Positions 1 to 45,557 of a stretch of DNA of 64,000 nucleotides are shown here, one piece after another (the stretch's first letter is position 1; every line of letters begins with the position of its first letter). The notes beneath the pieces are model-generated. The model saw only the letters and a program-made list of their open reading frames with translations. It was not told where the DNA came from and did no database searches. The position numbers and the translations under genes are program-made. This DNA comes from Rebecca billardiae RCC1528 (taxonomy: Eukaryota; Protista; Haptophyta), in assembly GCA_965240325.2 (NCBI GenBank), contig OZ251253.1, positions 62,001 through 126,000 on the forward strand. Direction: 5' to 3'.

Positions 1-3000
1 CGTCGACCACCAGCACGCCCAGCGCGCGAGAGAGCGCCTCGAGGTCGGCGGGCGACGACGCGCTCGCGCCGGGCGTGAGCACAGCCACAGCGTCGACCGC
101 GCGCTCGCCCGCGCCGCTGTCCGTGCTGAGCGTGAACACCACGTCCAGCAGCCCGTCGTCCGTGGTCGTCACAGAGCCCACGGCCAGCCGCTCCACGCCC
201 ACGCCCAGCGCGTCGGCAAGCGAGGCGAGCACGAAGCTGCTCGCGCCGTCAAACTCGGCGGCCGTCACGTTCAGCGTGAGCGCCACGTACTGCGTGCCCG
301 CGGACGCGTCGGGCGGCGGGCTCGGCGGCGAGGGCGGGAGCGGAGGCGGCCACGGCGCCGCGGGTGGTGCGGGTGGCGGCGAAGACGGGCGTGGCGGCGA
401 GGGTGGCGGCGACGGCGGTGCGTGCGCCCGGGGCGCGCTGGCCGCGGGCAATCCCAGCAGCGCCGACAGCTCGGCCAGGCTCGCCGGAGACTCGGCCGTC
501 GCGCCAGGCGTGAGCAAGCCCACCGGGTCGGCGACGGGCACCTCGTCGAGCAGCGGCGCCGTCGTCACGCGGACCACCACGTCGAGCAGCCCGCCCTCGC
601 CGCTCGACACCGAGTCGATCACCACGCGGTCCGGGTCGACGCCCAGCTGCGCCGCGAGCGCCTCGCGCACCGCGTCGCTCGACGCTGCAAACGCGGCCGC
701 GCTCGCGTCCACGCTCAGCGCGATGTACTGGTTGGTGCCAAAGTCGGGCGGCGGCGAGGGCGGCGAGGGCGGCGCCGAGGGCGGCATGAAGCCGCGCGGC
801 ACCGAGAGCACGGGCGTGCCGAGGAGGCTCGACAGCTCCGCGAGGGTGCCCGGCGACTCGTCAGTCGCGCCCGGCGCGAGAACGGACAGCGCGTCCACTG
901 CGAGCTCGCCCGCCACAGCGTCGGTCGTCACCTTGATCACCACCTCGAGCCCGCCACCGTCCACGCCGCGGGTCGATTCGACACTCACGCGGTCAACGCT
1001 CACGCCAAGCTGCGCAGCGATCGCCACGAGCGTCGACGCCGCCGTTGCACCAAATGCGTCCGCGCTCGTGTCGAGCACGAGGGCCACGTACTGCGCGACC
1101 GAGAAGTCGGGCGGCGGATGTGGCGGCGGCGACGGCGGCGGCGGCGGCGTGGGCGGCGAGGGCGGCGGCGAAGGCGGCGACGAGGGCGGCACGTGGTTGA
1201 ACGGCTGCGCGCGCACGGGCACGCCCAGCGCGGCCGAGAGCTCAGCCAGGCTGGTTGGCGACGTCGGCGTCGCGCCCGGCGCGAGCGCGGCGGCAGGGTC
1301 TACCGGCGTCTCGCCCGCGGCCGCGTCCGTCGTCACCTTGAACACCACGCTCAGCAGCCCGCCCTCGCTCCGCACCTGCTCGACGCTCACGCGCGACGCG
1401 TCCACGCCGAGCTCGGCCGCCACGCGCGACACCGTCTGCGCCGTCACCGCCGCGAATGCGACGGGCGTCATGTCGAGCTGCAGCACGACGTACTCCTCGC
1501 GGTCGAAGCTCGGCGGGGGCGAGGGCGACGGCGGCAGCGGCGGCGGCGACGGCGGCACGTGCCGGTGCGGCGCGTCGACCACCAGCACGCCCAGTGCGCG
1601 AGAGAGCGCCTCGAGGTCTGAGGGCGACGACGCGCTCGCGCCGGGCGTGAGCACAGCCACTGCGTCGACCGCGCGCTCGCCCGCGCCGCTGTCCGTGCTG
1701 AGCGTGAACACCACGTCCAGCAGCCCGTCGTCAGTTGTCGTCACAGAGCCCACGGCCAGCCGCTCCATGCCCACGCCCAGCGCGTCAGCGAGCGAGGCGA
1801 GCAGGAAGCTGCTCGCGCCGTCAAACTCGGCGGCCGTCACGTTCAGCGTGAGCGCCACGTACTGCGTGCCCGCGGACGCGTCGGGCGGCGGGCTCGGCGG
1901 CGAGGGCGGGCGCGGAGGCGGCGACGGCGCCGATGGCGGTGCGGGTGGCGGCGAAGACGGGCGTGGCGGCGAAGGCGGCGGCGAAGGCGGCGCGTGCGCC
2001 CGGGGCGCGCTGCCCACGGGCACGCCCAGCAGCGCCGACAGCTCGGCCAGGCTCGCCGGAGACTCGGACGTCGCGCCCGGCGTGAGCGAGCCCACCGGGT
2101 CGGCGACGGGAACCTCGTCGAGCAGCGGCGCCGTCGTCACGCGGATCACCACGTCGAGCAGCCCGCCCTCGCCGCTCGACACCGAGTCGATCACCACGCG
2201 GTCCGGATCGACGCCCAGCTGCGCCGCGAGCGCCTCGCGCACAGCGTCGCTCGACGCTGCGAACGCGGCCGCGCTCGCCTCCACGCTCAGCGCGATGTAC
2301 TGGTTGGTGCCAAAGTCGGGCGGCGGCGAGGGCGGCGAGGGCGACGCCGAGGGCGGCATGAAGCCGCGCGGCACCGAGAGCACGGGCGTGCCGAGGAGGC
2401 TCGACAGCTCCGCGAGGGTGCTCGGCGACTCGTCGGTCGCGCCCGGCGCGAGAACGGACAGCGCGTCCACTGCGAGCTCGCCCGCCACGGCGTCGGTCGT
2501 CACCTTGATCACCACCTCGAGCCCGCCACCGTCCACGCCGCCGGTCGACTCCACACTCACGCGGTCGGCGCTCACGCCCAGCTGCGCAGCGATCGCCGCG
2601 AGCGTCGACGCCGCCGTCGCGTCGAACGCGTCCGCGCTCGTGTCGAGCACGAGGGCCACGTACTGCGCGCGCGTGTAGTCTGGCGGTGGCTGCGGCGGCG
2701 CAGAGGGCGACGCGGGCGGCGACGAGGGCGGCACGTGGTTCAACGGCTGAGCGCGCACGGGCACGCCCAGCGCCGCGGACAGCTCGGCAAGGCTTGTGAA
2801 CGAGCTCGCGGTCGCGCCAGGGGTGAGCATGGCGGCCACGTCAACACTCGGCTCACCCGCCGACTCAGCCGTCGTCACCTTCAGCACCACGCTGAGCAGA
2901 CCGGCCTCACTCCGCACCTGCTCGACGCTCACGCGCGACGCGTCCACGCCGAGCTCGGCCGCCACGCGCGACACCGTCTGCGCAGAGACGGACGCGAACG

Positions 3001-32900: not shown

Positions 32901-34954
32901 CTGGGCGGCGGGCTCGGCGGCGGGCTCGGCGGTGGGCTCGGCGGCGGACTCGGCGGAGGAGAGGGTGGCGGGCTGGGCGGCGGCGAGGGCGGCGGGCTCG
33001 GCGGCGGCGGGCTCGGCGGCGGGCTGGGCGGAGGGCTCGGCGGCGGCGACGGCGGCGGGCTCGGCGGCGGACTGGGCGGCGGACTGGGCGGAGGGCTCGG
33101 CGGCGGGCTCGGCGGCGGCGAAGGCGGAGGGCTCGGCGGCGGTGACGGCGGTGGGCTCGGCGGGGGCGGGCTCGGGGGCGGGCTCGGGGGCGGGCTGGGC
33201 GGTGGGCTCGGCGGCGGACTGGGCGGTGGGCTGGGCGGCGGGCTGGGCGGTGGACTGGGCGGCGGGCTCGGCGGCGGGCTCGGCGGCGGGCTCGGCGGCG
33301 GGCTGGGCGGCGGGCTTGGCGGCGGGCTCGGCGGCGGGCTCGGTGGCGGTGATGGCGGCGGGCTCGGTGGCGGCGGGCTTGGCGGTGGGCTCGGCGGCGG
33401 AGAGGGCGGCGGGCTCGGCGGTGGGCTCGGCGGCGGCGAGGGCGGCGGGCTCGGCGGCGGGCTGGGCGGCGGCGACGGGGGCGGTGGGCTGGGCGGAGGG
33501 CTGGGCGGCGGGCTGGGCGGCGGGCTGGGCGGTGGACTGGGCGGCGGGCTGGGCGGCGGGCTGGGCGGTGGGCTCGGCGGCGGGCTCGGAGGCGGGCTGG
33601 GCGGCGGGCTTGGCGGTGGACTGGGCGGCGGGCTTGGCGGCGGGCTCGGCGGAGGGCTCGGCGGCGGTGATGGCGGCGGGCTCGGCGGCGGCGGGCTGGG
33701 CGGCGGGCTCGGCGGCGGCGAGGGCGGCGGGCTCGGCGGCGGGCTCGGCGGCGGCGACGGCGGCGGGCTCGGCGGCGGGCTCGGTGGCGGGCTCGGCGGC
33801 GGCGACGGCGGCGGGCTCGGCGGCGGCGACGGCGGCGGGCTCGGCGGCGGCGACGGCGGCGGCGACGGCGGCGGCGACGGCGGTGGGCTCGGCGGAGGGG
33901 AAGGTGGCGGTGGGCTCGGCGGCGGGCTTGGAGGCGGCGACGGCGGCGGCGACGGTGGCGGGCTCGGTGGCGGGCTCGGCGGAGGGCTTGGCGGTGGCGG
34001 GCTCGGCGGCGGAGACGGCGGCGGTGACGGAGGCGGCTCCGGCGGTGGGATCGGCGGCGGGCTGGGCGGCGGGCTGGGCGGCGGCGGGCTCGGCGGCGGG
34101 GACGGCGGTGGCGGGCTCGGCGGCGGGGACGGCGGCGGGCTCGGCGGCGGGCTTGGCGGCGGCGATGGCGGCGGCGACGGCGGCGGCGTTGGCGGCGGCG
34201 CCGGCGGCGGCGGACTTGGTGGTGGGCTGGGCGGCGGGCTCGGCGGCGGGCTCGGCGGCGGGCTCGGCGGTGGCGGCGAGGGCGGCGGCGACGGCGGTGG
34301 CGACGGCGGCGGCGACGGCGGCGGCGACGGCGGTGGCGACGGCGGCGGCGACGGCGGCGGCGGCGACGGCGGCGGGCTCGGCGGAGGGCTCGGCGGCGGC
34401 GCCGGCGGAGGGCTCGGCGGCGGGCTCGGCGGCGGGCTCGGCGGCGGCGGCGATGGCGGCGGGCTCGGTGGCGGCGATGGTGGCGGCGATGGTGGCGGGC
34501 TCGGCGGCGGGCTCGGCGGCGGCGGGCTCGGCGGCGGGCTCGGCGGCGGCGACGGTGGCGGTGGCGATGGCGGCGGCGATGGCGGCGGGCTCGGCGGCGG
34601 CGGGCTCGGCGGCGGCGCCGGCGGCGGGCTGGGCGGCGAGGGCGGCGAGGGCGGGGATGGCGGTGGCGGTGGGCTCGGCGGCGGCGACGGCGGCGGCGGG
34701 CTCGGCGGCGGCGACGGCGGGTTCGCCGTGAGCCGCCGTCGTGCGGCCGGCTCGGCCGATCGCCCATCGGCAGCTGGCGGCGGAGCGAAGGCTGCCTCGG
34801 CCCCGGGCGGCGCGCGCGCGCGCGCGCGCGCGGCGCCCGGCCGTGGGTCTTCGCGGATGCCGACGGCGCCGACTGCGATCATGAGCACGGCGATCCATGC
34901 CGCGCGCGAGGGCCGCGATGCGGCCCTCCTCCACACGCTGCGCAGTGGCGCCAT
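1..34954 (-). CDS. Giant secreted/surface extensin-mucin-like protein: signal/anchor + ~3,600 aa (Ser-Pro3)n + ~59 SEA-like domains; 3' partial, at least 11,651 aa, intronless in the window
   Basis: ATG at 34954-34952 with in-frame stops just upstream (34963-34961, 34978-34976). Hand translation gives MAPLRSVWRRAASRPSRAAWIAVLMIAVGAVGIR...RRRLTANPPSPPPS. The same frame still reads VLTPGASASSPADLEALSRALGVLVVD at bases 82-2. The ORF track lists no terminated minus ORF in this frame, and all long + shadow ORFs (75, 2796, 5910, 7479) share one register. Confidence 0.9.
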   Translation of the reverse strand, partial: MAPLRSVWRRAASRPSRAAWIAVLMIAVGAVGIREDPRPGAARARARAPPGAEAAFAPPPAADGRSAEPAARRRLTANPPSPPPSPPPPSPPPSPPPPPSPPSPPSPPSPPPAPPPSPPPPSPPPSPPPSPPPPSPPPSPPPSPPPPSPPPSPPPSPPPSPPPSPPPSPPPPSPPPSPPPSPPPAPPPSPPPSPPPSPPPPSPPPSPPPSPPPSPPPSPPPSPPPSPPPPSPPPSPPPSPPPSPPPSPPPPAPPPTPPPSPPPSPPPSPPPSPPPSPPPSPPPPSPPPSPPPPSPPPSPPPIPPPEPPPSPPPSPPPSPPPPSPPPSPPPSPPPSPPPSPPPSPPPSPPPPSPPPSPPPSPPPSPPPSPPPSPPPSPPPSPPPSPPPSPPPSPPPSPPPSPPPSPPPSPPPSPPPSPPPSPPPPSPPPSPPPSPPPSPPPSPPPSPPPSPPPSPPPSPPPSPPPSPPPSPPPSPPPSPPPSPPPSPPPSPPPPSPPPSPPPSPPPSPPPSPPPSPPPSPPPSPPPSPPPPSPPPSPPPSPPPSPPPSPPPSPPPSPPPSPPPSPPPSPPPSPPPSPPPSPPPSPPPSPPPSPPPSPPPPSPPPSPPPSPPPSPPPSPPPSPPPSPPPSPPPSPPPSPPPSPPPSPPPSPPPPSPPPSPPPSPPPSPPPSPPPSPPPSPPPSPPPSPPPSPPPSPPPSPPPSPPPSPPPSPPPSPPPPSPPPSPPPSPPPSPPPSPPPSPPPSPPPSPPPPSPPPSPPPSPPPSPPPSPPPSPPPIPPPSPPPSPPPSPPPSPPPSPPPSPPPPSPPPSPPPSPPPSPPPSPPPSPPPSPPPSPPPSPPPPSPPPSPPPSPPPSPPPSPPPSPPPSPPPSPPPSPPPSPPPSPPPSPPPSPPPPSPPPSPPPSPPPSPPPSPPPSPPPSPPPSPPPSPPPSPPPSPPPSPPPSPPPSPPPSPPPSPPPPSPPPSPPPSPPPSPPPSPPPSPPPSPPPSPPPSPPPSPPPSPPPSPPPPSPPPSPPPSPPPSPPPSPPPSPPPSPPPSPPPSPPPSPPPSPPPSPPPSPPPSPPPSPPPSPPPPSPPPSPPPSPPPSPPPSPPPSPPPSPPPSPPPSPPPSPPPSPPPSPPPSPPPSPPPSPPPSPPPPSPPPSPPPSPPPSPPPSPPPSPPPSPPPSPPPSPPPSPPPSPPPSPPPSPPPSPPPSPPPSPPPPSPPPSPPPSPPPSPPPSPPPSPPPSPPPSPPPSPPPSPPPSPPPSPPPSPPPSPPPSPPPSPPPPSPPPSPPPSPPPSPPPSPPPSPPPSPPPSPPPSPPPSPPPSPPPSPPPSPPPSPPPSPPPSPPPPSPPPSPPPSPPPSPPPSPPPSPPPSPPPSPPPSPPPSPPPSPPPSPPPSPPPSPPPSPPPSPPPPSPPPSPPPSPPPSPPPSPPPSPPPSPPPSPPPSPPPSPPPSPPPSPPPSPPPSPPPRPPPSPPPSPPPSPPPSPPPSPPPSPPPRPPPSPPPSPPPSPPPSPPPSPPPSPPPSPPPSPPPSPPPSPPPSPPPSPPPSPPPPSPPPSPPPSPPPSPPPSPPPSPPPSPPPSPPPSPPPSPPPSPPPSPPPSPPPSPPPSPPPSPPPPSPPPSPPPSPPPSPPPSPPPSPPPSPPPSPPPSPPPSPPPSPPPSPPPSPPPSPPPRPPPSPPPSPPPSPPPSPPPSPPPSPPPRPPPSPPPSPPPSPPPSPPPSPPPSPPPSPPPSPPPSPPPSPPPSPPPRPPPSPPPSPPPSPPPSPPPSPPPSPPPSPPPSPPPSPPPSPPPSPPPSPPPSPPPSPPPSPPPSPPPSPPPSPPPSPPPSPPPSPPPSPPPSPPPSPPPSPPPSPPPSPPPSPPPSPPPSPPPSPPPSPPPSPPPSPPPSPPPSPPPSPPPSPPPSPPPSPPPSPPPSPPPSPPPSPPPSPPPSPPPSPPPSPPPSPPPSPPPSPPPSPPPSPPPSPPPSPPPSPPPSPPPSPPPSPPPSPPPSPPPSPPPSPPPSPPPSPPPSPPPSPPPSPPPSPPPSPPPSPPPSPPPSPPPSPPPSPPPSPPPSPPPSPPPSPPPSPPPSPPPSPPPSPPPSPPPSPPPSPPPSPPPSPPPSPPPSPPPSPPPSPPPSPPPSPPPSPPPSPPPSPPPSPPPSPPPSPPPSPPPSPPPSPPPSPPPSPPPSPPPSPPPSPPPSPPPSPPPSPPPSPPPSPPPSPPPSPPPSPPPSPPPSPPPSPPPSPPPSPPPSPPPSPPPSPPPSPPPSPPPSPPPSPPPSPPPSPPPSPPPSPPPSPPPSPPPSPPPSPPPSPPPSPPPSPPPSPPPSPPPSPPPSPPPSPPPSPPPSPPPSPPPSPPPSPPPSPPPSPPPSPPPSPPPSPPPSPPPSPPPSPPPSPPPSPPPSPPPSPPPSPPPSPPPSPPPSPPPSPPPSPPPSPPPSPPPSPPPSPPPSPPPSPPPSPPPSPPPSPPPSPPPSPPPSPPPSPPPSPPPSPPPSPPPSPPPSPPPSPPPSPPPSPPPSPPPSPPPSPPPSPPPSPPPSPPPSPPPSPPPSPPPSPPPSPPPSPPPSPPPSPPPSPPPSPPPSPPPSPPPSPPPSPPPSPPPSPPPSPPPSPPPSPPPSPPPSPPPSPPPSPPPSPPPSPPPSPPPSPPPSPPPSPPPSPPPSPPPSPPPSPPPSPPPSPPPSPPPSPPPSPPPSPPPSPPPSPPPSPPPSPPPSPPPSPPPSPPPSPPPSPPPSPPPSPPPSPPPSPPPSPPPSPPPSPPPSPPPSPPPSPPPSPPPSPPPSPPPSPPPSPPPSPPPSPPPSPPPSPPPSPPPSPPPSPPPSPPPSPPPSPPPSPPPSPPPSPPPSPPPSPPPSPPPSPPPSPPPSPPPSPPPSPPPSPPPAPPPSPPPSPPPSPPPSPPPSPPPSPPPSPPPSPPPSPPPSPPPSPPPSPPPSPPPSPPPSPPPSPPPSPPPSPPPSPPPSPPPSPPPSPPPSPPPSPPPSPPPSPPPSPPPSPPPSPPPSPPPSPPPSPPPSPPPSPPPSPPPSPPPSPPPSPPPSPPPSPPPSPPPSPPPSPPPSPPPSPPPSPPPSPPPSPPPSPPPSPPPSPPPSPPPSPPPSPPPSPPPSPPPSPPPSPPPSPPPSPPPSPPPSPPPSPPPSPPPSPPPSPPPSPPPSPPPSPPPSPPPSPPPSPPPSPPPSPPPSPPPSPPPSPPPSPPPSPPPSPPPSPPPSPPPSPPPSPPPSPPPSPPPSPPPSPPPSPPPSPPPSPPPSPPPSPPPSPPPSPPPSPPPSPPPSPPPSPPPSPPPSPPPSPPPSPPPSPPPSPPPSPPPSPPPSPPPSPPPSPPPSPPPSPPPSPPPSPPPSPPPSPPPSPPPSPPPSPPPSPPPSPPPSPPPSPPPSPPPSPPPSPPPSPPPSPPPSPPPSPPPSPPPSPPPSPPPSPPPSPPPSPPPSPPPSPPPSPPPSPPPSPPPSPPPSPPPSPPPSPPPSPPPSPPPSPPPSPPPSPPPSPPPIPPPSPPPSPPPSPPPSPPPSPPPSPPPSPPPSPPPSPPPSPPPSPPPSPPPSPPPSPPPSPPPSPPPSPPPSPPPSPPPSPPPSPPPSPPPSPPPSPPPSPPPSPPPSPPPSPPPSPPPSPPPSPPPSPPPSPPPPSPPPSPPPSPPPSPPPSPPPPSPPPSPPPSPPPSPPPSPPPSPPPSPPPSPPPSPPPPSPPPGPPPSPPPSPPPSFIPSPPPHTPPAPPSSPPSPPPRPPPSPPPAPPPSLPPPPRTEPFPPPSPPAPPPSPPPSPPPSRPPSPPPSPPPPTPPPSPPPPASPPQPPSTPPGAPPPTPPPSPPPPPRTLPFPPPSPPSSPPPPSPPPPPSPPSPPSPPSPPPDLSAESYAALTLNTTLDAFGNASVAMLATIGAQLGVDVGRLSVEGVTITDEGLVRVVLKLVAETGAGGGAGEPLVDLAAVLAPGASETAPASLEELSAALGVDVVSVPRAHVPPSPPPSPPSVPPRAPPPPPPAPPPSPPDPPPSPPSPPPSLAANEYVELTLDVSAEDFAVDSHIVLGAIAETLGVDEARVSVNQLVPNEDGTLSVVVRVSTDPEAGEQPVDAVGQLTPGATPSSPATLEALSQSLGVTVVELPRSFTPPSPPPVPSAPPPPPLAAETFVRLTLGTTEAAFSEQSAALLEALADELGVDASRLSVESTASTTGGELDVVIRVTTEPSLGETAVDPIAELAPGASETAPASLEELSAALGVDVVSVPRAHVPPSPPPLMPPSSPPLRPPPPSPPPSPPDPPPSPPSPPPGSATTEYVELRLDVSAEDFAVLSGDLLSAMAAELGVDASRVDIDVLEPNEDGSLSVLLKVTTDEEAGETAVNAAALLTPGASADSVASLAELSTSLGVVVLDTPVSRISPSPPPVPSAPPPPPLVAETFVRLTLGTTEAAFSEQSAALLEALADELGVDASRLSVESTASTTGGALDVVIRVTTEPSLGETVVDPIAELAPGASETAPASLEELSAALGVDVVSVPRAHVPPSPPPASPPNAPPFPPSPLSPPPSPPPSPPDPPPSPPSPPPGSATTEYVELRLDVSAEDFAVLSGDLLSAMAAELGVDPSRVDIDVLEPNEDGSLSVLLKVTTDEEAGETAVNAAALLTPGASAVSVASLAELSTSLGVVVLDTPVSRISPSPPPVPSAPPPPPLVAETFVRLTLGTTEAAFSEQSAALLEALADELGVDASRLSVESTAGTTGGELDVVIRVTTQPPLGESVVDPIAELAPGASETAPASLEELSAALGVDVVSVPRAHVPPSPPPASPPNAPPAPPAPLSPPPSPPPSPPDPPPSPPSPPPGSATTEYVELRLDVSAEDFAVLSGDLLSAMAAELGVDPSRVDIDVLEPNEDGSLSVLLKVTTDEEAGETAVNAAAQLTPGASADSVASLAELSASLGVIVLDTPVSRVPPSPPPMPSAPPPPPLVAETFVRLTLGTTEAAFSEQSAALLEALADELGVDASRLSVESTASTTGGALDVVIRVTTEPSLGETAVDPIAELAPGASETAPASLEELSAALGVDVVSVPRAHVPPSPPPASPPNAPPFPPSPLSPPPSPPPSPPDPPPSPPSPPPGSATTEYVELRLDVSAEDFAVLSGDLLSAMAAELGVDPSRVDIDVLEPNEDGSLSVLLKVTTDEEAGETAVNAAALLTPGASADSVASLAELSASLGVIVLDTPVRRISPSPPPMPSAPPPPPLVAETFVRLTLGTTEAVFSEQSAALLEALADELGVDASRLSVESTASTTGGELDVVIRVTTEPSLGETAVDPIAELAPGASETAPASLEELSAALGVDVVSVPRAHVPPSPPPASPPNAPPAPPSPLSPPPSPPPSPPDPPPSPPSPPPGSATTEYVELRLDVSAEDFAVLSGDLLSVMAAELGVDPSRVDIDVLEPNEDGSLSVLLKVTTDEEAGETAVNAAALLTPGASAVSVASLAELSASLGVVVLDTPVRRISPSPPPMPSAPPPPPLVAETFVRLTLGTTEAAFSEQSAALLEALADELGVDASRLSVESTASTTGGELDVVIRVTTEPSLGETAVDPIAELVPGASETAPASLEELSAALGVDVVSVPRAHVPPSPPPASPPNAPPFPPSPLSPPPSPPPSPPDPPPSPPSPPPGSATTEYVELRLDVSAEDFAVLSGDLLSAMAAELGVDPSRVDIDVLEPNEDGSLSVLLKVTTDEEAGETAVNAAAQLTPGASADSVASLAELSASLGVVVLDTPVSRISPSPPPVPSAPPPPPLVAETFVRLTLGTTEAAFSEQSAALLEALADELGVDASRLSVESTASTTGGELDVVIRVTTEPSLGETAVDPIVELAPGASETAPASLEELSAALGVDVVSVPRAHVPPSPPPASPPNAPPFPPSPLSPPPSPPPSPPDPPPSPPSPPPGSATTEYVELRLDVSAEDFAVLSGDLLSAMAAELGVDPSRVDIDVLEPNEDGSLSVLLKVTTDEEAGETAVNAAAQLTPGASADSVASLAELSASLGVVVLDTPVSRISPSPPPVPSAPPPPPLVAETFVRLTLGTTEAAFSEQSAALLEALADELGVDASRLSVESTASTTGGELDVVIRVTTEPSLGETAVDPIAELAPGASETAPASLEELSAVLGVDVVSAPRAHVPPSPPPASPPNAPPFPPSPLSPPPSPPPSPPDPPPSPPSPPPGSATTEYVELRLEVSAEDFAVLSGDLLSAMAAELGVDPSRVDIDVLEPNEDGSLSVLLKVTTDEEAGETAVNAAAQLTPGASADSVASLAELSASLGVVVLDTPVSRISPSPPPVPSAPPPPPLVAETFVRLTLGTTEAAFSEQSAALLEALADELGVDASRLSVESTASTTGGELDVVIRVTTEPSLGETAVDPIAELAPGASETAPASLEELSAALGVDVVSVPRAHVPPSPPPASPPNAPPFPPSPLSPPPLPPPSPPDPPPSPPSPPPGSATTEYVELRLDVSAEDFAVLSGDLLSAMAAELGVDASRVDIDVLEPNEDGSLSVLLKVTTDEEAGETAVNAAAQLTPGASADSVASLAELSTSLGVIVLDTPVRRISPSPPPMPSAPPPPPLVAETFVRLTLGTTEAVFSEQSAALLEALADELGVDASRLSVESTASTTGGELDVVIRVTTEPSLGETAVDPIAELAPGASETAPASLEELSAALGVDVVSVPRAHVPPSPPPASPPNAPPFPPSPLSPPPSPPPSPPDPPPSPPSPPPGSATTEYVELRLDVSAEDFAVLSGDLLSAMAAELGVDASRVDIDVLEPNEDGSLGVLLKVTTDEEAGETAVNAAVQLTPGASADSVASLAELSASLGVVVLDTPVSRISPSPPPMPSAPPPPPLVAETFVRLTLGTTEAAFSEQSAALLEALADELGVDASRLSVESTASTTGGALDVVIRVTTEPSLGETAVDPIAELAPGASETAPASLEELSAALGVDVVSVPRAHVPPSPPPASPPNAPPFPPSPLSPPPSPPPSPPDPPPSPPSPPPGSATTEYVELRLDVSAEDFAVLSGGVLSALAAELGVDPSRVDIDVLEPNEDGSLSVLLKVTTDEEAGEVAVNAAAQLTPGASADSVASLAELSASLGVLVLEQPRSLAPPSPPPPPHSPPPPPPLVAETFVRLTLGTTEAAFSEQSAALLEALADELGVDASRLSVESTASTTGGALDVVIRVTTEPSLGETVVDPIAELAPGASETAPASLEELSAALGVDVVSVPRAHVPPSPPPAPPSPPTPPPPSPRQPPPSPPPSPPDPPPSPPSPPPGSASTEYVELALDTTPEEFAVSGGSVLLALAAELGVSASRVSLDVLGVNADGSLRVVIKVGTDEEAGETPVDAAAQLTPGVSSASVGSLSELSASLGVTVLEVPRSPSRPSPPPPPPLVAEAFVRLTLGTTEAAFSEQSAALLEALADELGVDASRLSVESTASTTGGALDVVIRLTTEPSLGETAIDPIAELAPGASETAPTSLEELSAALGVDVVSVPRAHVPPSPPPAPPLRPPPAPPSPLSPPPSPPPSPPDPPPSPPSPPPGSATTEYVELRLDVSAEDFAVLSGGVLAALAAELGVDPSRVGIDVLEPNEDGSLRVLLKVTTDVEAGEVAVNAAAQLTPGASAGSVASLAELSASLGVLVLEQPRSLAPPSPPPPPHSPPPPPPLVAETFVRLTLGTTEAAFSEQSAALLEALADELGVDASRLSVASTAGTAGGELDVVIRVTTEPSLGETAIDPIAELAPGASETAPASLEELSAALGVDVVSVPRAHVPPSPPPAPPSPPTPPPPSPRQPPPSPPPSPPDPPPSPPSPPPGSASTEYVELALDTTPEEFAVSGGSVLVALAAELGVSASRVSLDVLGVNADGSLRVVIKVSTDEEAGETPVDAAAQLTPGVSSASVGSLSELSASLGVTVLEVPRSPSRPSPPPPPPLVAETFVRLTLGTTEAAFSEQSAALLEALADELGVDASRLSVESTASTTGGALDVVIRLTTEPSLGETAVDPIAELAPGASETAPASLEELSAALGVDVVSVPRAHVPPSPPPAPPLRPPPAPPSPLSPPPSPPPSPPDPPPSPPSPPPGSATTEYVELRLDVSAEDFAVLSGGVLAALAAELGVDPSRVGIDVLEPNEDGSLRVLLKVTTDVEAGEVAVNAAAQLTPGASAGSVASLAELSASLGVLVLEQPRSLAPPSPPPPPPLVAETFVRLTLGTTEAAFSEQSAALLEALADELGVDASRLSVASTAGTAGGELDVVIRVTTEPSLGETAIDPIAELAPGASETAPASLEELSAALGVDVVSVPRAHVPPSPPPAPPSPPTPPPPSPRQPPPSPPPSPPDPPPSPPSPPPGSASTEYVELALDTTPEEFAVSGGSVLVALAAELGVSASRVSLDVLGVNADGSLRVVIKVSTDEEAGETPVDAAAQLTPGVSSASVGSLSELSASLGVTVLEVPRSPSRPSPPPPPPLVAETFVRLTLGTTEAAFSEQSAALLEALADELGVDASRLSVESTASTTGGELDVVIRVTTEPSLGETAVDPIAELAPGASETAPASLEELSAALGVDVVSVPRAHVPPLAPPSAPPPPSLPPPSRPPSPPHPPPVPPSPPPSGTSSHVLLTFRASAEEFAAASSSVLAALSATLGVDAEQVQIELVDDAGGGQVDVVFVIRPPSSSDEPVQEVAQRLTPGEDGALVESLDELSEMLGLAVVALPRGHLPPSPPPHPPPDFASAQYVSVVLETSAADFALSADELVAAVAAELGVDASRVSVHTIAGSSGGLEVVIRVTTDVAAGEEAVDALAVLTPGATDESPSTLAELSSLLGTPVLSVPRGFMPPSAPPSPPSPPPDFGTNQYIALSVEASAAAFAASSDAVREALAAQLGVDPDRVVIDSVSSGEGGLLDVVVRVTTAPLLDEVPVADPVGSLTPGATVESPASLAELSALLGLPVGSVPRAHAPPSPPPSPPRPSSPPPAPPSAPSPPPLPPSPPRPPPDASAGTQYVALTLDVTAAEFDGASSLLLASLADALGVGVERLAVGSVTTTDDGLLDVVFTLSTDGGAGERAVDAVAVLTPGASASSPADLEALSRALGVLVVDAPHRHVPPSPPPLPPAQLGMPPSPPVPAPAPPPDRSANEYVLLQVDMAASEFAALAPAVEANVASALGVAASRVTVEAVQSADGLLSVVIKIATDTAAGEQTVHAAAALTPGAPTSSLASLAELSEALGVPVRALPRNHVPPAPPPAPPSPPPLPPPDFSVGQYVALVLDTSAEAFDATAASTLAAIAVQLGVSADRVSVESTSGVDGGGLEVVIKVTTDAVAGELAVDALSILAPGATDESPGTLAELSSLLGTPVLSVPRGFMPPSAPPSPPSPPPDFGTNQYIALSVESSAAVFAASSDAAREALAAQLGVDPDRVVIDSVSSGEGGLLDVVIRVTTAPLLDEVPVADPVGSLTPGATAESPASLAELSALLGLPVASVPRAHAPPSPPPSPPRPSWPPPAPPAAPSPPPRPPSPPSPPPDASAGTQYVALTLNVTAAEFDGASSLLLASLADALGVGVERLTVGSATITDDGLLDVVFTLSTDGGAGERAVDAVALLTPGASASSPADLEALSRALGVLVVDAPHRHVPPSPPPLPPSPSPPPSFDSEQYVALRLDMSSVAFASVSAETVSRVAAELGVDASRVSVEQVRSEDGLLSVVFKVTTDGTMGEPSVDVAAMLTPGATASSPTSLAELSAALGVPVRAQPLNHVPPSSPPASPSAPPQPPPDYTRAQYVALVLDTSADAFDATAASTLAAIAAQLGVSADRVSVESTGGVDGGGLEVVIKVTTDAVAGELAVDALSFLAPGATDESPGTLAELSSLLGTPVLSVPRGFMPPSAPPSPPSPPPDFGTNQYIALSVEASAAAFAASSDAVREALAAQLGVDPDRVVIDSVSSGEGGLLDVVIRVTTAPLLDEVPVADPVGSLTPGATSESPASLAELSALLGVPVGSAPRAHAPPSPPPSPPRPSSPPPAPPSAPSPPPRPPSPPSPPPDASAGTQYVALTLNVTAAEFDGASSFLLASLADALGVGVERLAVGSVTTTDDGLLDVVFTLSTDSGAGERAVDAVAVLTPGASTSSPSDLEALSRALGVLVVDAPHRHVPPSPPPLPPSPSPPPSFDREEYVVLQLDMTPVAFAAVTAQTVSRVAAELGVDASRVSVEQVRSEGGLLSVVFKVTTDAAAGETPVDPAAALAPGATPTSPTSLAELSAALGVPVRAQPFNHVPPSSPPSPPPSPPTPPPPPSPPPHPPPDFSVAQYVALVLDTSADAFGATAASTLVAIAAQLGVSVDRVSVESTRGVDGGGLEVVIKVTTDAVAGELAVDALSVLAPGATDESPGTLAELSSLLGTPVLSVPRGFMPPSAPPSPPSPPPDFGTNQYIALSVDASAAAFAASSDAVREALAAQLGVDPDRVVIDSVSSGEGGLLDVVVRVTTAPLLDEVPVADPVGLLTPGATAESPASLAELSALLGLPAASAPRAHAPPSPPPSPPRPSSPPPAPPAAPWPPPLPPSPPSPPPDASAGTQYVALTLNVTAAEFDGASSFLLASLADALGVGVERLTVGSVTTTDDGLLDVVFTLSTDSGAGERAVDAVAVLTPGASASSPADLEALSRALGVLVVDAPHRHVPPSPPPLPPSPSPPPSFDSEQYVALRLDMSSVAFASVSAQTVSRVAAELGVDASRVSVEQVRSEAGLLSVVLKVTTAESAGEPSVDVAAMLTPGATASSFTSLAELSAALGVPVRAQPLNHVPPSSPPASPSAPPQPPPDYTRAQYVALVLDTSADAFDATAASTLAAIAAQLGVSADRVSVESTGGVDGGGLEVVIKVTTDAVAGELAVDALSVLAPGATDESPSTLAELSSLLGTPVLSVPRGFMPPSASPSPPSPPPDFGTNQYIALSVEASAAAFAASSDAVREALAAQLGVDPDRVVIDSVSSGEGGLLDVVIRVTTAPLLDEVPVADPVGSLTPGATSESPASLAELSALLGVPVGSAPRAHAPPSPPPSPPRPSSPPPAPPSAPSPPPRPPSPPSPPPDASAGTQYVALTLNVTAAEFDGASSFLLASLADALGVGMERLAVGSVTTTDDGLLDVVFTLSTDSGAGERAVDAVAVLTPGASASSPSDLEALSRALGVLVVDAPHRHVPPSPPPLPPSPSPPPSFDREEYVVLQLDMTPVAFAAVTAQTVSRVAAELGVDASRVSVEQVRSEGGLLSVVFKVTTDAAAGETPVDPAAALAPGATPTSPTSLAELSAALGVPVRAQPFNHVPPSSPPSPPPSPPTPPPPPSPPPHPPPDFSVAQYVALVLDTSADAFGATAASTLVAIAAQLGVSVDRVSVESTRGVDGGGLEVVIKVTTDAVAGELAVDALSVLAPGATDESPGTLAELSSLLGTPVLSVPRGFMPPSAPPSPPSPPPDFGTNQYIALSVDASAAAFAASSDAVREALAAQLGVDPDRVVIDSVSSGEGGLLDVVVRVTTAPLLDEVPVADPVGLLTPGATAESPASLAELSALLGLPAASAPRAHAPPSPPPSPPRPSSPPPAPPAAPWPPPLPPSPPSPPPDASAGTQYVALTLNVTAAEFDGASSFVLASLADALGVGVERLAVGSVTTTDDGLLDVVFTLSTDSGAGERAVDAVAVLTPGASASSPADLEALSRALGVLVVD
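9360..14070 (-). repeat. Four-domain (A-B'-A-C) tandem array, period 1596-1617 bp
   Basis: Landmark spacings: 10434 to 12030 (1596), 11232 to 12849 (1617), 12030 to 13647 (1617). Confidence 0.85.
14070..22665 (-). repeat. 816-bp (272 aa, two-domain A/B) tandem array, ~10.5 near-identical copies
   Basis: Landmarks recur every 816 bp; shadow ORF ends fall at 14466, 15282, 16098, 16914, 17730, 18546, 19362, 20178, 20994 and 21810. Confidence 0.95.
23930..34720 (-). repeat. Coding tandem repeat with a mainly 12-bp unit encoding Ser-Pro-Pro-Pro (extensin/HRGP-type rod)
   Basis: Plus strand (GGC GGC GGG CTC / GGC GGC GGC GAC)n, which reads AGC/TCG CCG CCG CCG on the minus strand, over ~10.8 kb. 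Confidence 0.95.
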
Positions 34955-36131
34955 GATCTGTCACTGGCTCAACTCCTACAGCCAGCCCCCTCCTCGACCA
35001 GTGCAAGTTGACCAGTGCTCCGGCACCGGTCGGCACCCGCCCGCCTGCTGGCTCGCCGAGTGGCTTGTGAACCATTCGCCCGAAGGGGCGATGGCGAGCA
35101 CTGGGCGACGCGAGGGCCCGCGTGCGCAGCGCTCCCAAGGCCGCATGCGGGCTTGACAGCCGTGCGCGGGCGCTTTGCGGGGGCGAGAACACCCGTAGAC
35201 AGCAATCGCGCCGCCTCGTCCACGCCCTGGCCGCCCTCTCCGCGCGCAGAGACCTGCCGGATGGCAAGCGCAGTTCTGGAGAAGGCCTGTCCGACGAGCG
35301 TGATGGACACGCGTGCGCCCCTGGGACATTCAAAGGTCGGCTTTTTCGCTTCTGCGAGATGGGTATGGGTGTCTCAACATCACTGCTTCGCCGGCAGCCA
35401 TGCCGACATCGATCGGCAGGCCAGCAACGCGCAAGACGTGCATCTCGGTCGTGTGGCGTGCATGAGCCGCGAGCACTGGCACGACGTGCACGGCAAAGCC
35501 CGTCATGCGCCTCGACGCGCACGCGCCGCGGCGGACGACCGAGGAGGCGCGCGCAGGCTGGCCTTCTTGGCGGCGGCTGTCCGGGAGTGCCCGCGCACGC
35601 GCAACGCGTATTCAAAGAGCTCCCGGAAGGCAACGACTCCTATGGGACGCCTTGGGGACGCGCACGTTGCCTTTCGCCGCGCGAGGGCTCTTCGGGCGTA
35701 TGGTTTGCAAGCCAGTGGCAACCAGCGCGCGCGGTCCGGAGACGCAGGGCTGTTTTGTCACTTGCGAGTTCGGTCAATAGCTAGTTTCAGGGAAGTCCGC
35801 GGAAGATCGAATCTCATCCTGATACGCACTATCAGATGATCAGCTGTCCATCTGTGGAGCGGCATGAGCGATGAAAATATAGGGCTAAAGGCGCGATGCT
35901 CTTGATCATGCGGGAATGCACTCGATATCATAAATCCATACCGGCGTGGGTAATCCAAACTCTTTTTAACCAATCGTCGCGATATTACGACCCCACTTGT
36001 AAGTATGATCGTATTGGCGCGCGCTGAGGAATCTATCATGAATGCTATTTTAAACTATACGTGCCGGACCGCCCTGCACCGGACGGGCCCGGGGCTGACG
36101 AAACGGGCCAGACCGCCCGGGAGGCGCAGCC

Positions 36132-38843: not shown

Positions 38844-39000
38844 CGTGCGAGCCCTCGAGCGCCCGCACGCGCCCGTCGCAAAGCGCGCGGCTTGGGGATG
38901 CGCCCGCGCAGTGGCGGCAGGCGGCGAGAGAGCGCGCGCGGGTGGCAGTTGAGTGCGTCGCTCGAAGAGCGAGCTCCTGACCAAGCTCATCGGCGGCAGG
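38844..39000. promoter_or_regulatory. Putative bidirectional promoter between HPAT and PIP5K
   Basis: Only 157 bp separate the two divergent ATGs. Confidence 0.55.
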
Positions 39001-41041: not shown

Positions 41042-41072
<31 letters not shown>

Positions 41073-42160: not shown

Positions 42161-42202
42161 CGCGCGCGCCCGCCAATGATCAAATCGCTCGATCGCGCGC
42201 CG

Positions 42203-42750
42203 ATATATATATATATATATATATCGCGCATGCATCATAGCAGCGCGCAGAGTCGCTACTCACTCTCTACTAGTACTTGCTTCGGACCGTGGACGGATCG
42301 CGTCCGGTTCGGCTCATGGGCGAGTCGTCCTGCGACGATGACGAGCTAGTCGTCAGCGCTAAGCGCCGATTTAATAATATACGATATACCGCCGTTCGTC
42401 GATCGTCAGTCGGGCTATATGGCGGCCGGCTATAGCTACCGCGCCATCAGCGGCGACGCGGACATACTGCTACTGCTATATATATATATACTACAGGGCG
42501 CGGTCAGGGGCCATATAAGCATCTGCCGTATCCGCCGTACGGGCGCGCGCGCCGCGCGCGCGCGCCCTCTAAGACCGTATATATATATAATATATATATA
42601 TATATATTGTCGTGCGCACTCAGACGGACATCACAATGTGACAGACGACAATCTGTCGGCATCACTAGGGACCTTCCGTATCAGGATTACCTGCGCAGGT
42701 CCGACGTCCCTCAGGGGCCTGCGTATATATAATAATTAAATAAATACACG
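42203..42750. repeat. (TA)n microsatellite cluster / AT-rich island between convergent PIP5K and RhoGEF 3' ends
   Basis: TA runs at 42203-42224, ~42477-42490 and ~42578-42607. Confidence 0.85.

Positions 42751-45525: not shown

Positions 45526-45557
<32 letters not shown>

What the first reader, a model, noticed from the sequence alone, without database searches (positions are those of the whole stretch)
1..34954. Hidden giant gene: at least 11,651-aa intronless extensin plus SEA-like domain-array protein
Seen: one minus-strand frame is open from ATG 34954 past base 1. It reads hydrophobic leader, ~3,600 aa SPPP, then ~59 related acidic domains (e.g. ETFVRLTLGTTEAAFSEQSAALLEALADELGVDASRLSVESTASTTGGELDVVIRVTT...LEELSAALGVDVVSVP) with Pro linkers. 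Known: SPn repeats mark hydroxyproline-rich glycoproteins, and animal mucins pair a glycosylated rod with SEA domains. Inference: the beta-alpha-beta-beta-alpha-beta pattern suggests a SEA/ferredoxin-like fold, making this a >1 MDa chimera of a plant/green-algal-type HRGP rod and a mucin-like bead array. It could be a cell-coat, hair or scale filament. ORF callers report the wrong strand.
Basis: partly seen in the sequence, partly recalled or inferred. Interest (0 to 1): 0.92.

Follow-up and report, generated by a model that had tools for sequence, protein, structure and literature searches.

The report
Giant algal SPPP-rod, SEA-like-bead surface protein
A very GC-rich, probably haptophyte, alga carries an uninterrupted gene of at least 35 kb for a protein over 1.1 MDa: a micrometre-long Ser-Pro-Pro-Pro rod followed by at least 59 copies of an uncatalogued SEA-like domain, resembling animal mucin MUC16 built with plant-type chemistry.

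Summary
The minus frame is open from base 34960 to base 2, with the ATG at 34954, giving 11,651 codons that run off the window.

The frame encodes, in order:
- a hydrophobic leader;
- 873 Ser-Pro(n) units (3,589 aa);
- a degenerate Pro-rich zone;
- 59 copies of a ~99-aa acidic domain, joined by Pro-rich linkers of 17-51 aa.

The minus strand is the coding one:
- Rod serines use both AGY and TCN codons. The mirror + frame would read them as a Leu/Asp/Glu mix.
- AlphaFold2 folds the sense domain at pLDDT 89.7. The antisense reading gives 46.
- The same domain occurs in a Pavlova gyrans transcript and in tandem on a 63%-GC metagenome contig.

The domain matches no Pfam family, SEA (PF01390) included. 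Its beta-alpha-beta-beta-alpha-beta model best matches the divergent SEA/MAD group: Nup54, CELSR1, CDH23 and PCDH15 MADs, MUC16 SEA, KIAA0319.

A hydroxyproline O-arabinosyltransferase gene lies 1.1 kb upstream on the same strand.

Still unknown are the C-terminus, transcription, glycosylation and true repeat number. No RNA run was listed.

The scan had already noted this stretch (s1-346304, s1-346472) and a similar giant gene on another piece of the same genome (s1-348465).

Verdict: a real gene, and a new variant of known kinds.

The parts
34952..34954 (-). Start codon of the giant ORF. An in-frame stop lies two codons upstream, at 34961-34963.
34856..34903 (-). N-terminal hydrophobic stretch of 16 residues (residues 18-33 from Met, mean Kyte-Doolittle 2.4), after an Arg-rich n-region. 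It is either a signal peptide or a type II signal anchor. It is the only clearly TM-like segment in the 11,651 residues; one marginal 19-residue window inside a domain also passes the cut-off.
34688..34855 (-). Short Arg/Ala/Pro-rich spacer between the leader and the rod. It includes an (Ala-Arg)n run encoded by a GC dinucleotide repeat.
23921..34687 (-). Ser-Pro3 rod of 3,589 aa and 873 units (835 SPPP, 34 SPPPP). Ser is encoded by AGY (522) and TCN (352), Pro by all four codons. The DNA repeat is only about 75% regular. Extended as a polyproline II helix it would be about 1.1 micrometre long.
23483..23920 (-). Degenerate Pro-rich transition of 146 aa, with mixed SPn, TPn, APn and RPn units.
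22721..23470 (-). Domains d01-d02, unique copies that are 38-59% identical to the other domains. A short-read contig of run X1 matches the second exactly (22739-22889).
14207..22651 (-). Domains d03-d23: a two-domain cassette (types A and B, 272 aa, 816 bp) repeated about 10.5 times. The ten cassettes that line up in register are 92-99% identical in DNA, and no two copies are identical. Linkers alternate between 51 and 23 aa.
9377..14053 (-). Domains d24-d35: a four-domain cassette of about 539 aa repeated about three times.
7397..9247 (-). Domains d36-d40, the most diverse copies. d36 is only 31-41% identical to the others.
2..7318 (-). Domains d41-d59: four domain types in an eight-domain super-cassette of 1,038 aa, 93-100% identical between copies. 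The array is cut by the window end inside d59, so the stop codon and C-terminus are not in the window.
36055..37803 (-). Neighbouring gene on the same strand, 1.1 kb upstream of the giant ATG: hydroxyproline O-arabinosyltransferase (Pfam HPAT PF23452, E 8.5e-76). It is a candidate modifying enzyme for the rod and linkers.
7395..35153 (+). Mirror open frame (9,253 codons) that shares the third codon position with the true frame. It reads Gly3-(Leu/Asp/Glu) in the rod and Ser/Thr/Ala-rich text in the domains. It is judged non-coding.

Best explanation
This is a real, unspliced (as far as the window shows) protein-coding gene on the minus strand of a very GC-rich eukaryotic alga, probably a haptophyte near the Pavlovales. 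It encodes a giant secretory-pathway glycoprotein of at least 11,651 aa.

Shown here:
- a leader with one hydrophobic segment;
- a 3,589-aa Ser-Pro3 rod;
- at least 59 copies of a ~99-aa, strongly acidic domain (net charge -3 to -16 each, about -700 for the array);
- stiff Pro-rich linkers between the domains;
- a confident ferredoxin-like beta-alpha-beta-beta-alpha-beta model for the domain, closest to SEA/MAD juxtamembrane domains.

Inferred:
- In the ER and Golgi the prolines of the rod and linkers are hydroxylated. The adjacent HPAT enzyme and later arabinosyltransferases then arabinosylate them. This locks the rod into a rigid glycan-sheathed polyproline II rod of about 1.1 micrometre, as in extensins, Chlamydomonas Mst1/Mstax and TLP-4 glycofibrils.
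- The domain array adds a bead-on-stiff-spacer segment of about 0.8 micrometre (about 0.6 from the linkers alone).
- By analogy with MUC16, Mstax and the protist receptor P0004, the N-terminus is the distal tip. In those proteins this kind of domain sits just above a C-terminal membrane anchor. The SEA-like array would therefore be membrane-proximal, with an anchor lying beyond base 1.
- The product would be an anionic surface fibre: a cell-coat or flagellar-hair type filament. Its SEA-like beads would act as a spacer and mechanical buffer. In the 17 domains that carry Asp-Gly-Ser/Thr at the beta2-beta3 hairpin, they might also be self-cleavage sites.
For: ORF and anatomy.

Coding strand:
- Exons of neighbouring genes in this window have GC3 of 0.94-1.0. 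The domain region has GC1 .76, GC2 .59 and GC3 .90 in the minus frame.
- Rod Ser uses two unrelated codon families, which the + frame would read as Leu, Asp and Glu.
- The sense frame has the highest amino-acid identity and BLOSUM score of the six frames, and no stops.
- AlphaFold2 on 15 sense copies gives pLDDT 89.7 and pTM 0.79. On 13 antisense copies it gives pLDDT 46 and pTM 0.12 with no secondary structure.

Independent homologues in the same frame:
- a Pavlova gyrans MMETSP transcript fragment, 50% identical and ending in a Pro-rich linker;
- a 63%-GC metagenome contig encoding at least 10 tandem copies.

Fold:
- VIA-align gives Z 10.1 Nup54, 9.9 CELSR1 MAD, 9.0 CDH23 MAD28, 8.6-8.9 PCDH15 MAD12, 7.8 MUC16 SEA, 7.6 dystrophin-glycoprotein complex, 7.4 IA-2 and 7.1 Notch2 HD.
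- AlphaFold DB hits include SEA-domain proteins of protists, KIAA0319, CELSR2, cadherins and ALE2.
- ESM Atlas gives TM about 0.7 to KIAA0319, ALE2_N and haptophyte clusters.
- Language-model features point to a haptophyte cluster and to SEA.

Glycosylation context: HPAT lies 1.1 kb upstream on the same strand. HPAT starts Hyp arabinosylation of extensin Ser-Hyp4 (PMC5371791).

Architecture precedents:
- Mstax, about 8,000 aa, has its N-terminus distal and a Ser-Hyp segment (bioRxiv 10.1101/2024.12.24.630281).
- TLP-4 is a tetrapeptide glycofibril with a rise of 12.4 A per repeat (PMC11725842).
- MUC16 has SEA repeats with Pro/Ser/Thr linkers (PMC10829539).
- P0004 has four such domains between a Thr-rich stalk and a TM helix.
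Against: - No RNA run was listed for this organism. The only runs that hold the sequence give 93-384-nt contigs at depth 2-5, so transcription, strand of transcription and array length are unverified.
- The stop codon and any anchor lie outside the window.
- The N-terminal hydrophobic stretch could itself be a type II anchor, which would invert the proposed orientation.
- No sequence model links the domain to SEA. The structural scores (Z 8-10) are only modestly above generic ferredoxin-like folds (Z about 7).
- Hydroxylation and arabinosylation are inferred from motif and neighbourhood only.
- Repeat counts in such arrays have been wrong before: MUC16 was revised from 63 to 19 repeats (PMC10829539).
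Confidence: 0.7

Rival explanations
1. The real gene is the + strand ORF 7395-35153, a Gly-rich protein followed by a Ser/Thr-rich protein. The minus frame is then only its open mirror image.
For: The + frame shares the third codon position and is open for 9,253 codons. It is the ORF that a mechanical list reports. Its aligned copies are nearly as similar as the sense copies: identity .452 against .468.
Against: - It has stops below 7395 and inside two of the 15 representative domain copies tried (d40 and d44).
- It would turn the uniform Ser position of the rod into a Leu/Asp/Glu mixture.
- GC1 would be lower than GC2.
- AlphaFold2 gives pLDDT 46 and pTM 0.12 with no secondary structure.
- All database homologues match the minus-frame protein.
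Confidence: 0.02
2. The sequence is a true coding relic or gene, but its size is not biological. Either the arrays were inflated or mis-joined by assembly, or the locus is an unexpressed, runaway tandem expansion, so no 1-MDa protein is made.
For: - There is no transcript or long-read support.
- Some cassette copies are 99-100% identical over hundreds of bases.
- MUC16 was over-counted at 63 repeats against 19 (PMC10829539).
- Extreme GC (84-87% in the rod) is hard to sequence.
Against: - No frame break occurs in 34,959 bases, although thousands of positions differ among copies.
- The 816-bp cassettes differ by 1-8% and none are identical. The rod DNA is only about 75% periodic, with synonymous variety. 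Assembler duplication would not produce this pattern.
- Two unique stretches are matched exactly by short-read contigs.
- The hierarchical cassette structure looks like natural unequal crossing-over.
Confidence: 0.13
3. The domain is just a generic ferredoxin-like (ACT, RRM or S6-like) module, unrelated to SEA by descent. It would have another role, for example cation or polysaccharide binding in a secreted, unanchored mucilage or matrix protein.
For: - No SEA, MAD or KIAA0319 sequence match exists.
- Foldseek against PDB gives E above 1e-3, and BMC shell, S6 and ACT folds appear in the lists.
- The domains are extremely acidic, unlike typical SEA domains.
- No anchor is seen in the window.
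Against: - In four independent libraries the top ranks go to extracellular juxtamembrane SEA/MAD-type domains rather than to intracellular ferredoxin folds.
- The protein context is that of SEA domains: a secretory leader, heavily O-glycosylatable flanks and tandem arrays.
- Distant sequence relatives sit between a mucin-like stalk and a TM helix (P0004).
Confidence: 0.15

Closest known systems
MUC16 / CA125 (animal membrane mucin)
   Same: Giant size, an N-terminal heavily O-glycosylatable rod, then a long tandem array of ~100-150-aa SEA-fold domains separated by Pro/Ser-rich linkers (PMC10829539). The MUC16 SEA structures match the model at Z 7.8 and 6.3.
   Different: There is no sequence similarity. 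The rod is Ser-Pro3, a target of Hyp-arabinosylation, not a Ser/Thr/Pro O-GalNAc mucin domain. There are 59 or more domains against 19. The domain has no Cys loop (0 Cys in the whole protein) and is very acidic. A C-terminal TM was not seen because it would lie outside the window.
Mstax and Mst1 of the Chlamydomonas mastigoneme
   Same: Mstax is a single ~8,000-aa polypeptide forming the axis of a sub-micrometre surface hair. It has a Ser-Hyp-rich N-terminal distal segment and arabinosylated polyproline II helices typically of Ser-Hyp3 (bioRxiv 10.1101/2024.12.24.630281).
   Different: No lectin domains and no Hyp11(X2Hyp)n repeats are present. No PKD2-like membrane region is seen in the window. 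The globular modules here are SEA-like and absent from Mstax. The organism is not a green alga.
Plant extensins and green-algal HRGP rods
   Same: Ser-Pro3-4 repeats and a secretory leader, with the dedicated HPAT (GT95) enzyme encoded next door (PMC5371791).
   Different: There are no Tyr cross-linking motifs: no YXY anywhere and no Tyr in the rod. The rod is tens of times longer than the ORFs usual for plant extensins (my own knowledge). It is fused to a folded-domain array.
TLP-4 glycofibrils (CryoSeek II)
   Same: A linear chain of Ser/Thr-Pro-x-x tetrapeptide repeats that would be held as a fibril by its glycan shell. The authors found long tetrapeptide arrays in many algae (PMC11725842).
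   Different: The TLP-4 sequence and source are unknown, and it uses 3,4-dihydroxyproline with very large glycans. Here only the peptide motif is known.
Divergent SEA / MAD domains (PCDH15 MAD12, CDH23 MAD28, CELSR MAD, KIAA0319 C-terminal domain, dystroglycan, IA-2, Nup54; Pei and Grishin 2017, cited in PMC11527881)
   Same: These are the best structural matches (Z 7.4-10.1; E 9e-5 to 1e-3 for KIAA0319). They share the same beta-alpha-beta-beta-alpha-beta topology and an extracellular setting.
   Different: They usually occur once, next to the membrane, whereas here there are at least 59 in tandem. No sequence model matches; PF23620 reaches only E 0.15 for one copy.

Membership tests
SEA domain (Pfam PF01390) | Significant match to the family's sequence profile | tested here: not met
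   hmmscan of 15 diverse copies at E up to 10 never lists PF01390. A profile search against PDB sequences finds no SEA chain.
SEA domain (Pfam PF01390) | Alpha/beta sandwich with beta-alpha-beta-beta-alpha-beta order, about 100-120 aa | tested here: met
   The AlphaFold2 model has pLDDT 89.7, with E2-10, H14-32, E39-46, E52-60, H71-75, H87-94 and a short final strand. MUC16 SEA matches at Z 7.8 and 6.3, and the TMPRSS6 and Gpr126 chains (Z 6.3 and 6.1) also appear.
SEA domain (Pfam PF01390) | Gly-Ser (GSVVV-type) autoproteolysis site in the beta2-beta3 hairpin; recalled from the literature, and present only in a subset of SEA domains | tested here: inconclusive
   A Gly is invariant in all 59 copies just before beta3. 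It is followed by Ser in 16 copies and Thr in 1 (motif D-G-S/T-L-x-V-hydrophobic-hydrophobic, domains d02-d34 even numbers). Structural equivalence to the SEA site, and cleavage itself, were not tested.
SEA domain (Pfam PF01390) | Extracellular, next to heavily O-glycosylated sequence | tested here: met
   There is a secretory-type leader, and every copy is flanked by Ser/Pro-rich linkers. The glycosylation itself is inferred.
Extensin (plant, sensu stricto) | Repeated Ser-Pro3-5 motifs behind a signal peptide | tested here: met
   873 S-P(n) units and an N-terminal hydrophobic leader. No signal-peptide predictor was available.
Extensin (plant, sensu stricto) | Tyr cross-linking motifs (YXY, VYK) between the SPn blocks | tested here: not met
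   There is no YXY in 11,651 aa. The rod has no Tyr, and the 43 Tyr in the protein sit elsewhere, most at the first strand of the domains.
Extensin (plant, sensu stricto) | Hyp formation and Hyp-arabinosylation, Ser-galactosylation | not testable with these tools
   Support is contextual only: the HPAT gene (E 8.5e-76) lies 1.1 kb upstream on the same strand.
Membrane mucin of MUC16 type | C-terminal transmembrane helix and cytoplasmic tail after the SEA array | not testable with these tools
   The ORF leaves the window at base 2 inside domain 59. No clear TM-like segment other than the leader exists in the window.
Mstax-like mastigoneme axis protein | Hyp11-(X2Hyp)n-Hyp12 repeats, lectin domains, PKD2-like membrane region | tested here: not met
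   The repeats are SPPP, not the Mstax type. No lectin or PKD Pfam hits were found on the tested parts. The membrane region, if any, lies outside the window.
Pherophorin / volvocine HRGP | Pherophorin domain flanking an (SP)n rod | tested here: not met
   No Pfam family, pherophorin included, matches the globular domains.

The most novel reading that the evidence does not exclude
A single polypeptide about 2 micrometres long forms a whole surface or flagellar hair of a Pavlova-like haptophyte. It would be an independent, convergent version of the animal MUC16 design: a Hyp-arabinosylated Ser-Pro3 glycorod as the shaft, plus a previously undescribed, lineage-restricted SEA-like domain family repeated at least 59 times as a membrane-proximal mechanical or self-cleaving module. 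The gene would be co-located with its own glycosyltransferase. This would give a molecular identity to haptophyte non-tubular hairs or coat fibrils. It would also show that extensin-type glycorods are used as cell-surface engineering material well outside green plants.
Probability: 0.25. Interest if true: 0.85.

Novelty: new variant of a known kind. Interest (0 to 1): 0.62.

Why it matters
If expressed as read, this would rank with the largest single-exon genes and largest proteins I know of in a protist (my own knowledge). It combines two building principles usually kept apart: the plant and green-algal Ser-Hyp glycorod and the animal mucin SEA-repeat array.

The domain family is almost invisible in public data. 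Only 28 weak-to-moderate hits were found in 1.84 billion representative proteins, with no Pfam model, so it is a candidate new family.

The adjacent HPAT gene offers a direct handle for testing extensin-type glycosylation outside Viridiplantae.

Genes like this are likely to be missed or called on the wrong strand in very GC-rich genomes, because the mirror frame stays open. The simple tests used here can rescue them: Ser codon-family switching, and AlphaFold on sense against antisense repeat alignments.

Tried and rejected
- Pfam on single copies, a two-domain unit, the leader and all 15 aligned copies gave nothing above noise.
- A profile search against PDB sequences gave only chance hits.
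- A word-indexed protein search with a five-domain stretch found nothing. Pro-rich words probably swamped the candidate list.
- The first RNA-run search was answered busy and the repeat listed none.
- Laying the three listed runs gave only 93-384-nt contigs at depth 2-5 from one run, with no direction. That says nothing on transcription or array length.
- I tried to see notes on the sequence beyond base 1 or on look-alike stretches. This was not possible or came back blank.
- Diacronema lutheri (73% GC, PMC8379373) was considered as the source. Its annotated HPAT is only 42% identical and no self-hit appeared. The window's own quinone reductase is held only on contigs of up to 3.9 kb.
- GC3 and codon-position substitution counts cannot separate the two mirror frames, because they share position 3. 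I used Ser codon families, stops, GC1 against GC2, folding and homologues instead.
- One translation of the HPAT region was in the wrong frame and was discarded.
Full report
**1. The observation**

The window is 75% G+C. The minus frame from 34960 to 2 has no stop in 11,653 codons and is the longest open stretch in any frame. The first Met is at 34954, two codons after an in-frame stop. At least 11,651 codons therefore belong to the ORF, which leaves the window at base 2.

The translation reads, in order:
- an Arg-rich N-terminus;
- a 16-residue hydrophobic stretch (window 34856-34903, mean hydropathy 2.4, the only clearly TM-like segment in the whole protein);
- a short Ala/Arg/Pro spacer;
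- 3,589 residues made of 873 Ser-Pro(n) units, of which 835 are SPPP and 34 are SPPPP, with only 17 residues that are neither Ser nor Pro;
- 146 residues of degenerate Pro-rich sequence;
- a domain array.

Linkers of 17-51 aa separate them and are about 51% Pro. The polypeptide in the window weighs 1.14 MDa, has a calculated pI near 4, and contains no cysteine.

**2. Is it more than a GC artefact, and which strand codes?**

In this genome coding exons have GC3 of about 0.94-1.0 and non-coding DNA is about 0.6-0.65. In such DNA the antisense frame that shares the third codon position tends to stay open. Here that frame is open from 7395 to 35153, and it is the ORF a mechanical list reports. Third-position statistics cannot separate the two mirror frames, so I used other tests.

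- **(a) Stops.** The + frame has stops below 7395 and inside two of the 15 representative domain copies tried. The minus frame has none. Four of the other five frames have 23-207 stops within the domain copies.
- **(b) Ser codon families.** In the rod, Ser is written with both AGC/AGT (522 times) and TCN (352 times), and Pro with all four codons. The DNA is only about 75% periodic, while the protein is 99.5% Ser/Pro. The mirror frame would read the same positions as Leu (524), Asp (245) and Glu (106). Only the minus frame shows the signature of selection on the amino acid.
- **(c) Codon-position GC.** GC1 (.76) exceeds GC2 (.59) in the minus frame for the domains.
- **(d) Cross-copy conservation.** Across 11 divergent copies, the sense frame has the best amino-acid identity (.468) and mean BLOSUM62 (2.05) of the six frames.
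- **(e) Folding control.** AlphaFold2 on an alignment of 15 sense copies gives pLDDT 89.7 and pTM 0.79. The same segments read in the mirror frame (13 copies, alignment A2) give pLDDT 46 and pTM 0.12 with no secondary structure.
- **(f) Homologues.** A profile search of 1.84 billion representative proteins finds only 28 hits, and all match the minus-frame protein. The second best is an 85-aa fragment from the Pavlova gyrans MMETSP1466 transcriptome. It is 50% identical to domain 37 and continues into a Pro-rich linker. The best hit lies on a 3.2-kb JGI metagenome contig of only 63% G+C, which encodes at least ten tandem copies with short linkers.

The minus strand codes, and the + ORF is a mirror artefact.

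**3. Anatomy of the array**

The copies fall into about ten sequence types that are 31-71% identical to each other. They are arranged hierarchically:
- two unique copies (d01-d02);
- a two-domain, 816-bp cassette repeated about 10.5 times, with in-register copies 92-99% identical in DNA and none identical (d03-d23);
- a four-domain cassette repeated about three times (d24-d35);
- five diverse copies (d36-d40);
- an eight-domain, 1,038-aa super-cassette repeated about 2.4 times before the window ends, with copies 93-100% identical (d41-d59).

Seventeen columns are invariant in the 15-copy alignment. They include F17, L32-G33-V34, G50, V54, E66, L75, P77-G78, L90-S91, L94-G95 and P102. The same hallmarks recur in the metagenome and Pavlova relatives.

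Each copy carries a net charge of -3 to -16, and the array as a whole about -700. This pattern of divergent copies, with frame-preserving and largely conservative changes, argues against assembler-made duplicates. It does not prove the copy number.

**4. The fold**

The model is beta1-alpha1-beta2-beta3-(short helix)-alpha2-beta4.

- **Foldseek against the PDB.** Only weak matches (E above 1e-3), but they include the Nup54 ferredoxin-like domain, the dystrophin-glycoprotein complex, IA-2, and the CELSR1 and cadherin-23 membrane-adjacent domains.
- **VIA-align against 48,161 chains, without Foldseek.** All seven matches at Z of 8 or more are of one kind: Nup54 (10.1), CELSR1 MAD (9.9), CDH23 MAD28 (9.0) and four PCDH15 MAD12 entries (8.0-8.9). 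They are followed by MUC16 SEA (7.8), the dystrophin-glycoprotein complex (7.6), IA-2 (7.4), Notch2 HD (7.1), then Trop2, TMPRSS6, MUC16 SEA5 and Gpr126 (6.1-6.3). Generic ferredoxin-like folds (mitoribosomal proteins, PheRS, ACT, RRM) start at Z about 7.4 and below.
- **AlphaFold DB clusters.** Protist SEA domain-containing proteins, a dystroglycan-type Peptidase S72 protein, KIAA0319-like and unnamed proteins whose accessions I take to be haptophyte and cryptophyte entries (organism names were not shown), at E 1e-5 to 1e-3.
- **Swiss-Prot models.** KIAA0319 and KIAA0319L (E 9e-5 to 1e-3, TM 0.6-0.67), CELSR2, ALE2, Nup54, fly cadherins and KIAA1549.
- **ESM Atlas.** TM about 0.7 to KIAA0319, ALE2_N and haptophyte clusters, one of which carries Ephrin_rec_like repeats.
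- **Language-model features.** Nearest is a haptophyte cluster (0.93), with SEA (PF01390) clusters among the named sets.

These are the families grouped as divergent SEA domains by Pei and Grishin (Protein Sci 2017). That paper is cited in PMC11527881, which also states that the MAD12-type domain is the same thing as SEA. I could not open the Pei and Grishin paper itself.

At the sequence level nothing matches: no Pfam family, SEA included, and no PDB sequence. I therefore file the domain as SEA/MAD-like by fold, not as a member of PF01390.

One detail is suggestive. A Gly is invariant in the beta2-beta3 hairpin, where SEA domains have their G/S self-cleavage site as I recall it. In the even-numbered domains d02-d34 this Gly is followed by Ser (16 copies) or Thr (1 copy), then a hydrophobic strand. 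Whether this is a cleavage site is untested.

**5. Surroundings**

A minus-strand ORF at 36055-37803 lies 1.1 kb upstream on the same strand, across an AT-richer spacer. It matches the hydroxyproline O-arabinosyltransferase family at E 8.5e-76. Its relatives are haptophyte and metagenomic HPATs: 59% identity at best, Prymnesium 47%, and the annotated Diacronema lutheri protein 42%. HPAT (GT95) adds the first arabinose to Hyp in extensin Ser-Hyp4 blocks (PMC5371791).

Further genes in the window are a PIP5K, a RhoGEF protein and a quinone oxidoreductase.

The evidence is:
- extreme GC, like Diacronema at 73% (PMC8379373);
- the Pavlova gyrans domain homologue;
- haptophyte-dominated Atlas clusters;
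- the window's own quinone reductase held only on short contigs of up to 3.9 kb.

Together these point to a Pavlova-like haptophyte that has no annotated proteome in the collections. This is an inference.

**6. How it most likely works**

Shown: a secretory-type leader, a near-perfect Ser-Pro3 rod, Pro-rich linkers, folded acidic SEA-like beads, and a neighbouring HPAT.

Inferred:
- Prolyl hydroxylation and arabinosylation turn the rod into a rigid glycan-coated polyproline II helix. At 0.31 nm per residue it would be about 1.1 micrometre long.
- That figure agrees with the 12.4 A rise per tetrapeptide of TLP-4 glycofibrils (PMC11725842) and the 3.2 A per Hyp of the mastigoneme helices (bioRxiv 10.1101/2024.12.24.630281).
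- The linkers alone add about 0.6 micrometre, and the beads about 0.2 more.

In three precedents the N-terminus is distal and the SEA-like or equivalent modules sit above a C-terminal anchor. These are Mstax, MUC16 (PMC10829539) and the protist receptor P0004. In P0004, four related domains lie between a Thr-rich stalk and a TM helix.

I therefore favour a cleaved signal peptide, an anchor beyond base 1, and a function as an anionic surface or flagellar fibre. The beads would act as a spacer, a mechanical buffer and possibly self-cleaving modules. The alternative is that the leader is a type II anchor and the array is the distal end. That cannot be excluded from the window.

**7. What is missing**

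- No RNA run was listed.
- The three runs found (2024, one sample, kind unknown) give only short low-depth contigs from one run. Exact matches at 22739-22889 and 23799-23949 confirm the sequence locally and nothing more.
- The MUC16 story, revised from 63 repeats to 19 by long reads (PMC10829539), warns against trusting repeat counts.
- The stop codon, the anchor, expression, glycosylation and location all remain to be shown.

**8. Comparison and novelty**

The parts are known kinds: extensin-type Ser-Pro3 rods, giant algal HRGP filaments such as Mstax, and SEA-repeat mucins such as MUC16.

Four things are new:
- the combination of these parts in one polypeptide;
- the scale, with 873 rod units and at least 59 domains in one exon;
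- the domain family itself, which is absent from Pfam and nearly absent from 1.84 billion proteins;
- its occurrence in what is probably a haptophyte, next to its putative glycosyltransferase.

Earlier notes of this scan flagged the HPAT pairing (s1-346304) and the rod (s1-346472) on this same stretch. They also flagged a similar giant gene with at least 40 SEA-like modules on another piece of the genome (s1-348465), and other SPPP-stalk proteins with polycystin-like bases (s1-341030, s1-332145). I verified the first two here. The others I could not check.

I rate this as a new variant of a known kind, with interest 0.62.

Noticed in passing
window 36055-37803 (-): A hydroxyproline O-arabinosyltransferase gene (PF23452, E 8.5e-76) lies 1.1 kb upstream of the giant gene on the same strand. 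Only profile positions 77-307 are matched, within the first 230 residues of this ORF, which then runs on for about 350 further residues. The N-terminal part of the enzyme may lie in an upstream exon.
   Followed up: partly
window 35000-64000: Coding exons show GC3 of 0.94-1.0 against about 0.6-0.65 G+C in non-coding DNA. Exon phase can therefore be read directly from position-specific GC, and nearly every gene has an open mirror ORF on the other strand.
   Followed up: partly
window 38953-42240 (+), 43258-45741 (-), 60840-62090 (-): Neighbouring genes are a PIP5K (E 1.3e-61), a RhoGEF-domain protein (E 1.5e-11) and a zinc-type quinone oxidoreductase. The oxidoreductase's exact product (P0054, 340 aa) is held in the public collection only on contigs of up to 3.9 kb.
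   Followed up: partly
L001:1-3183 (JGI metagenome 3300038657): A 63%-GC contig, open at both ends, encodes at least 10 tandem copies of the same domain with short, non-Pro linkers. Two overlapping gene calls (114-1310 and 1243-3183) suggest a frameshift or sequencing error inside one long gene.
   Followed up: partly
proteins P0004, P0005, P0007: These are protist surface receptors with Cys-rich Ephrin_rec_like-type repeats. In P0004 a Thr-rich mucin-like stalk is followed by four tandem copies of a distantly related domain (with an RRRLL insert), directly above a TM helix.
   Followed up: no
window 34815-34840 (-): A GC dinucleotide microsatellite inside the leader region encodes an (Ala-Arg)n run just after the hydrophobic segment. 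It is a possible source of length variation or frame slippage near the 5' end.
   Followed up: no
window 20200-23990: Run X1 holds only 93-384-nt contigs at depth 2-5 here. Its two sister runs of the same sample hold nothing, although all three have about 1.4-1.5 billion letters. This extreme-GC locus seems badly under-represented in short-read data.
   Followed up: no
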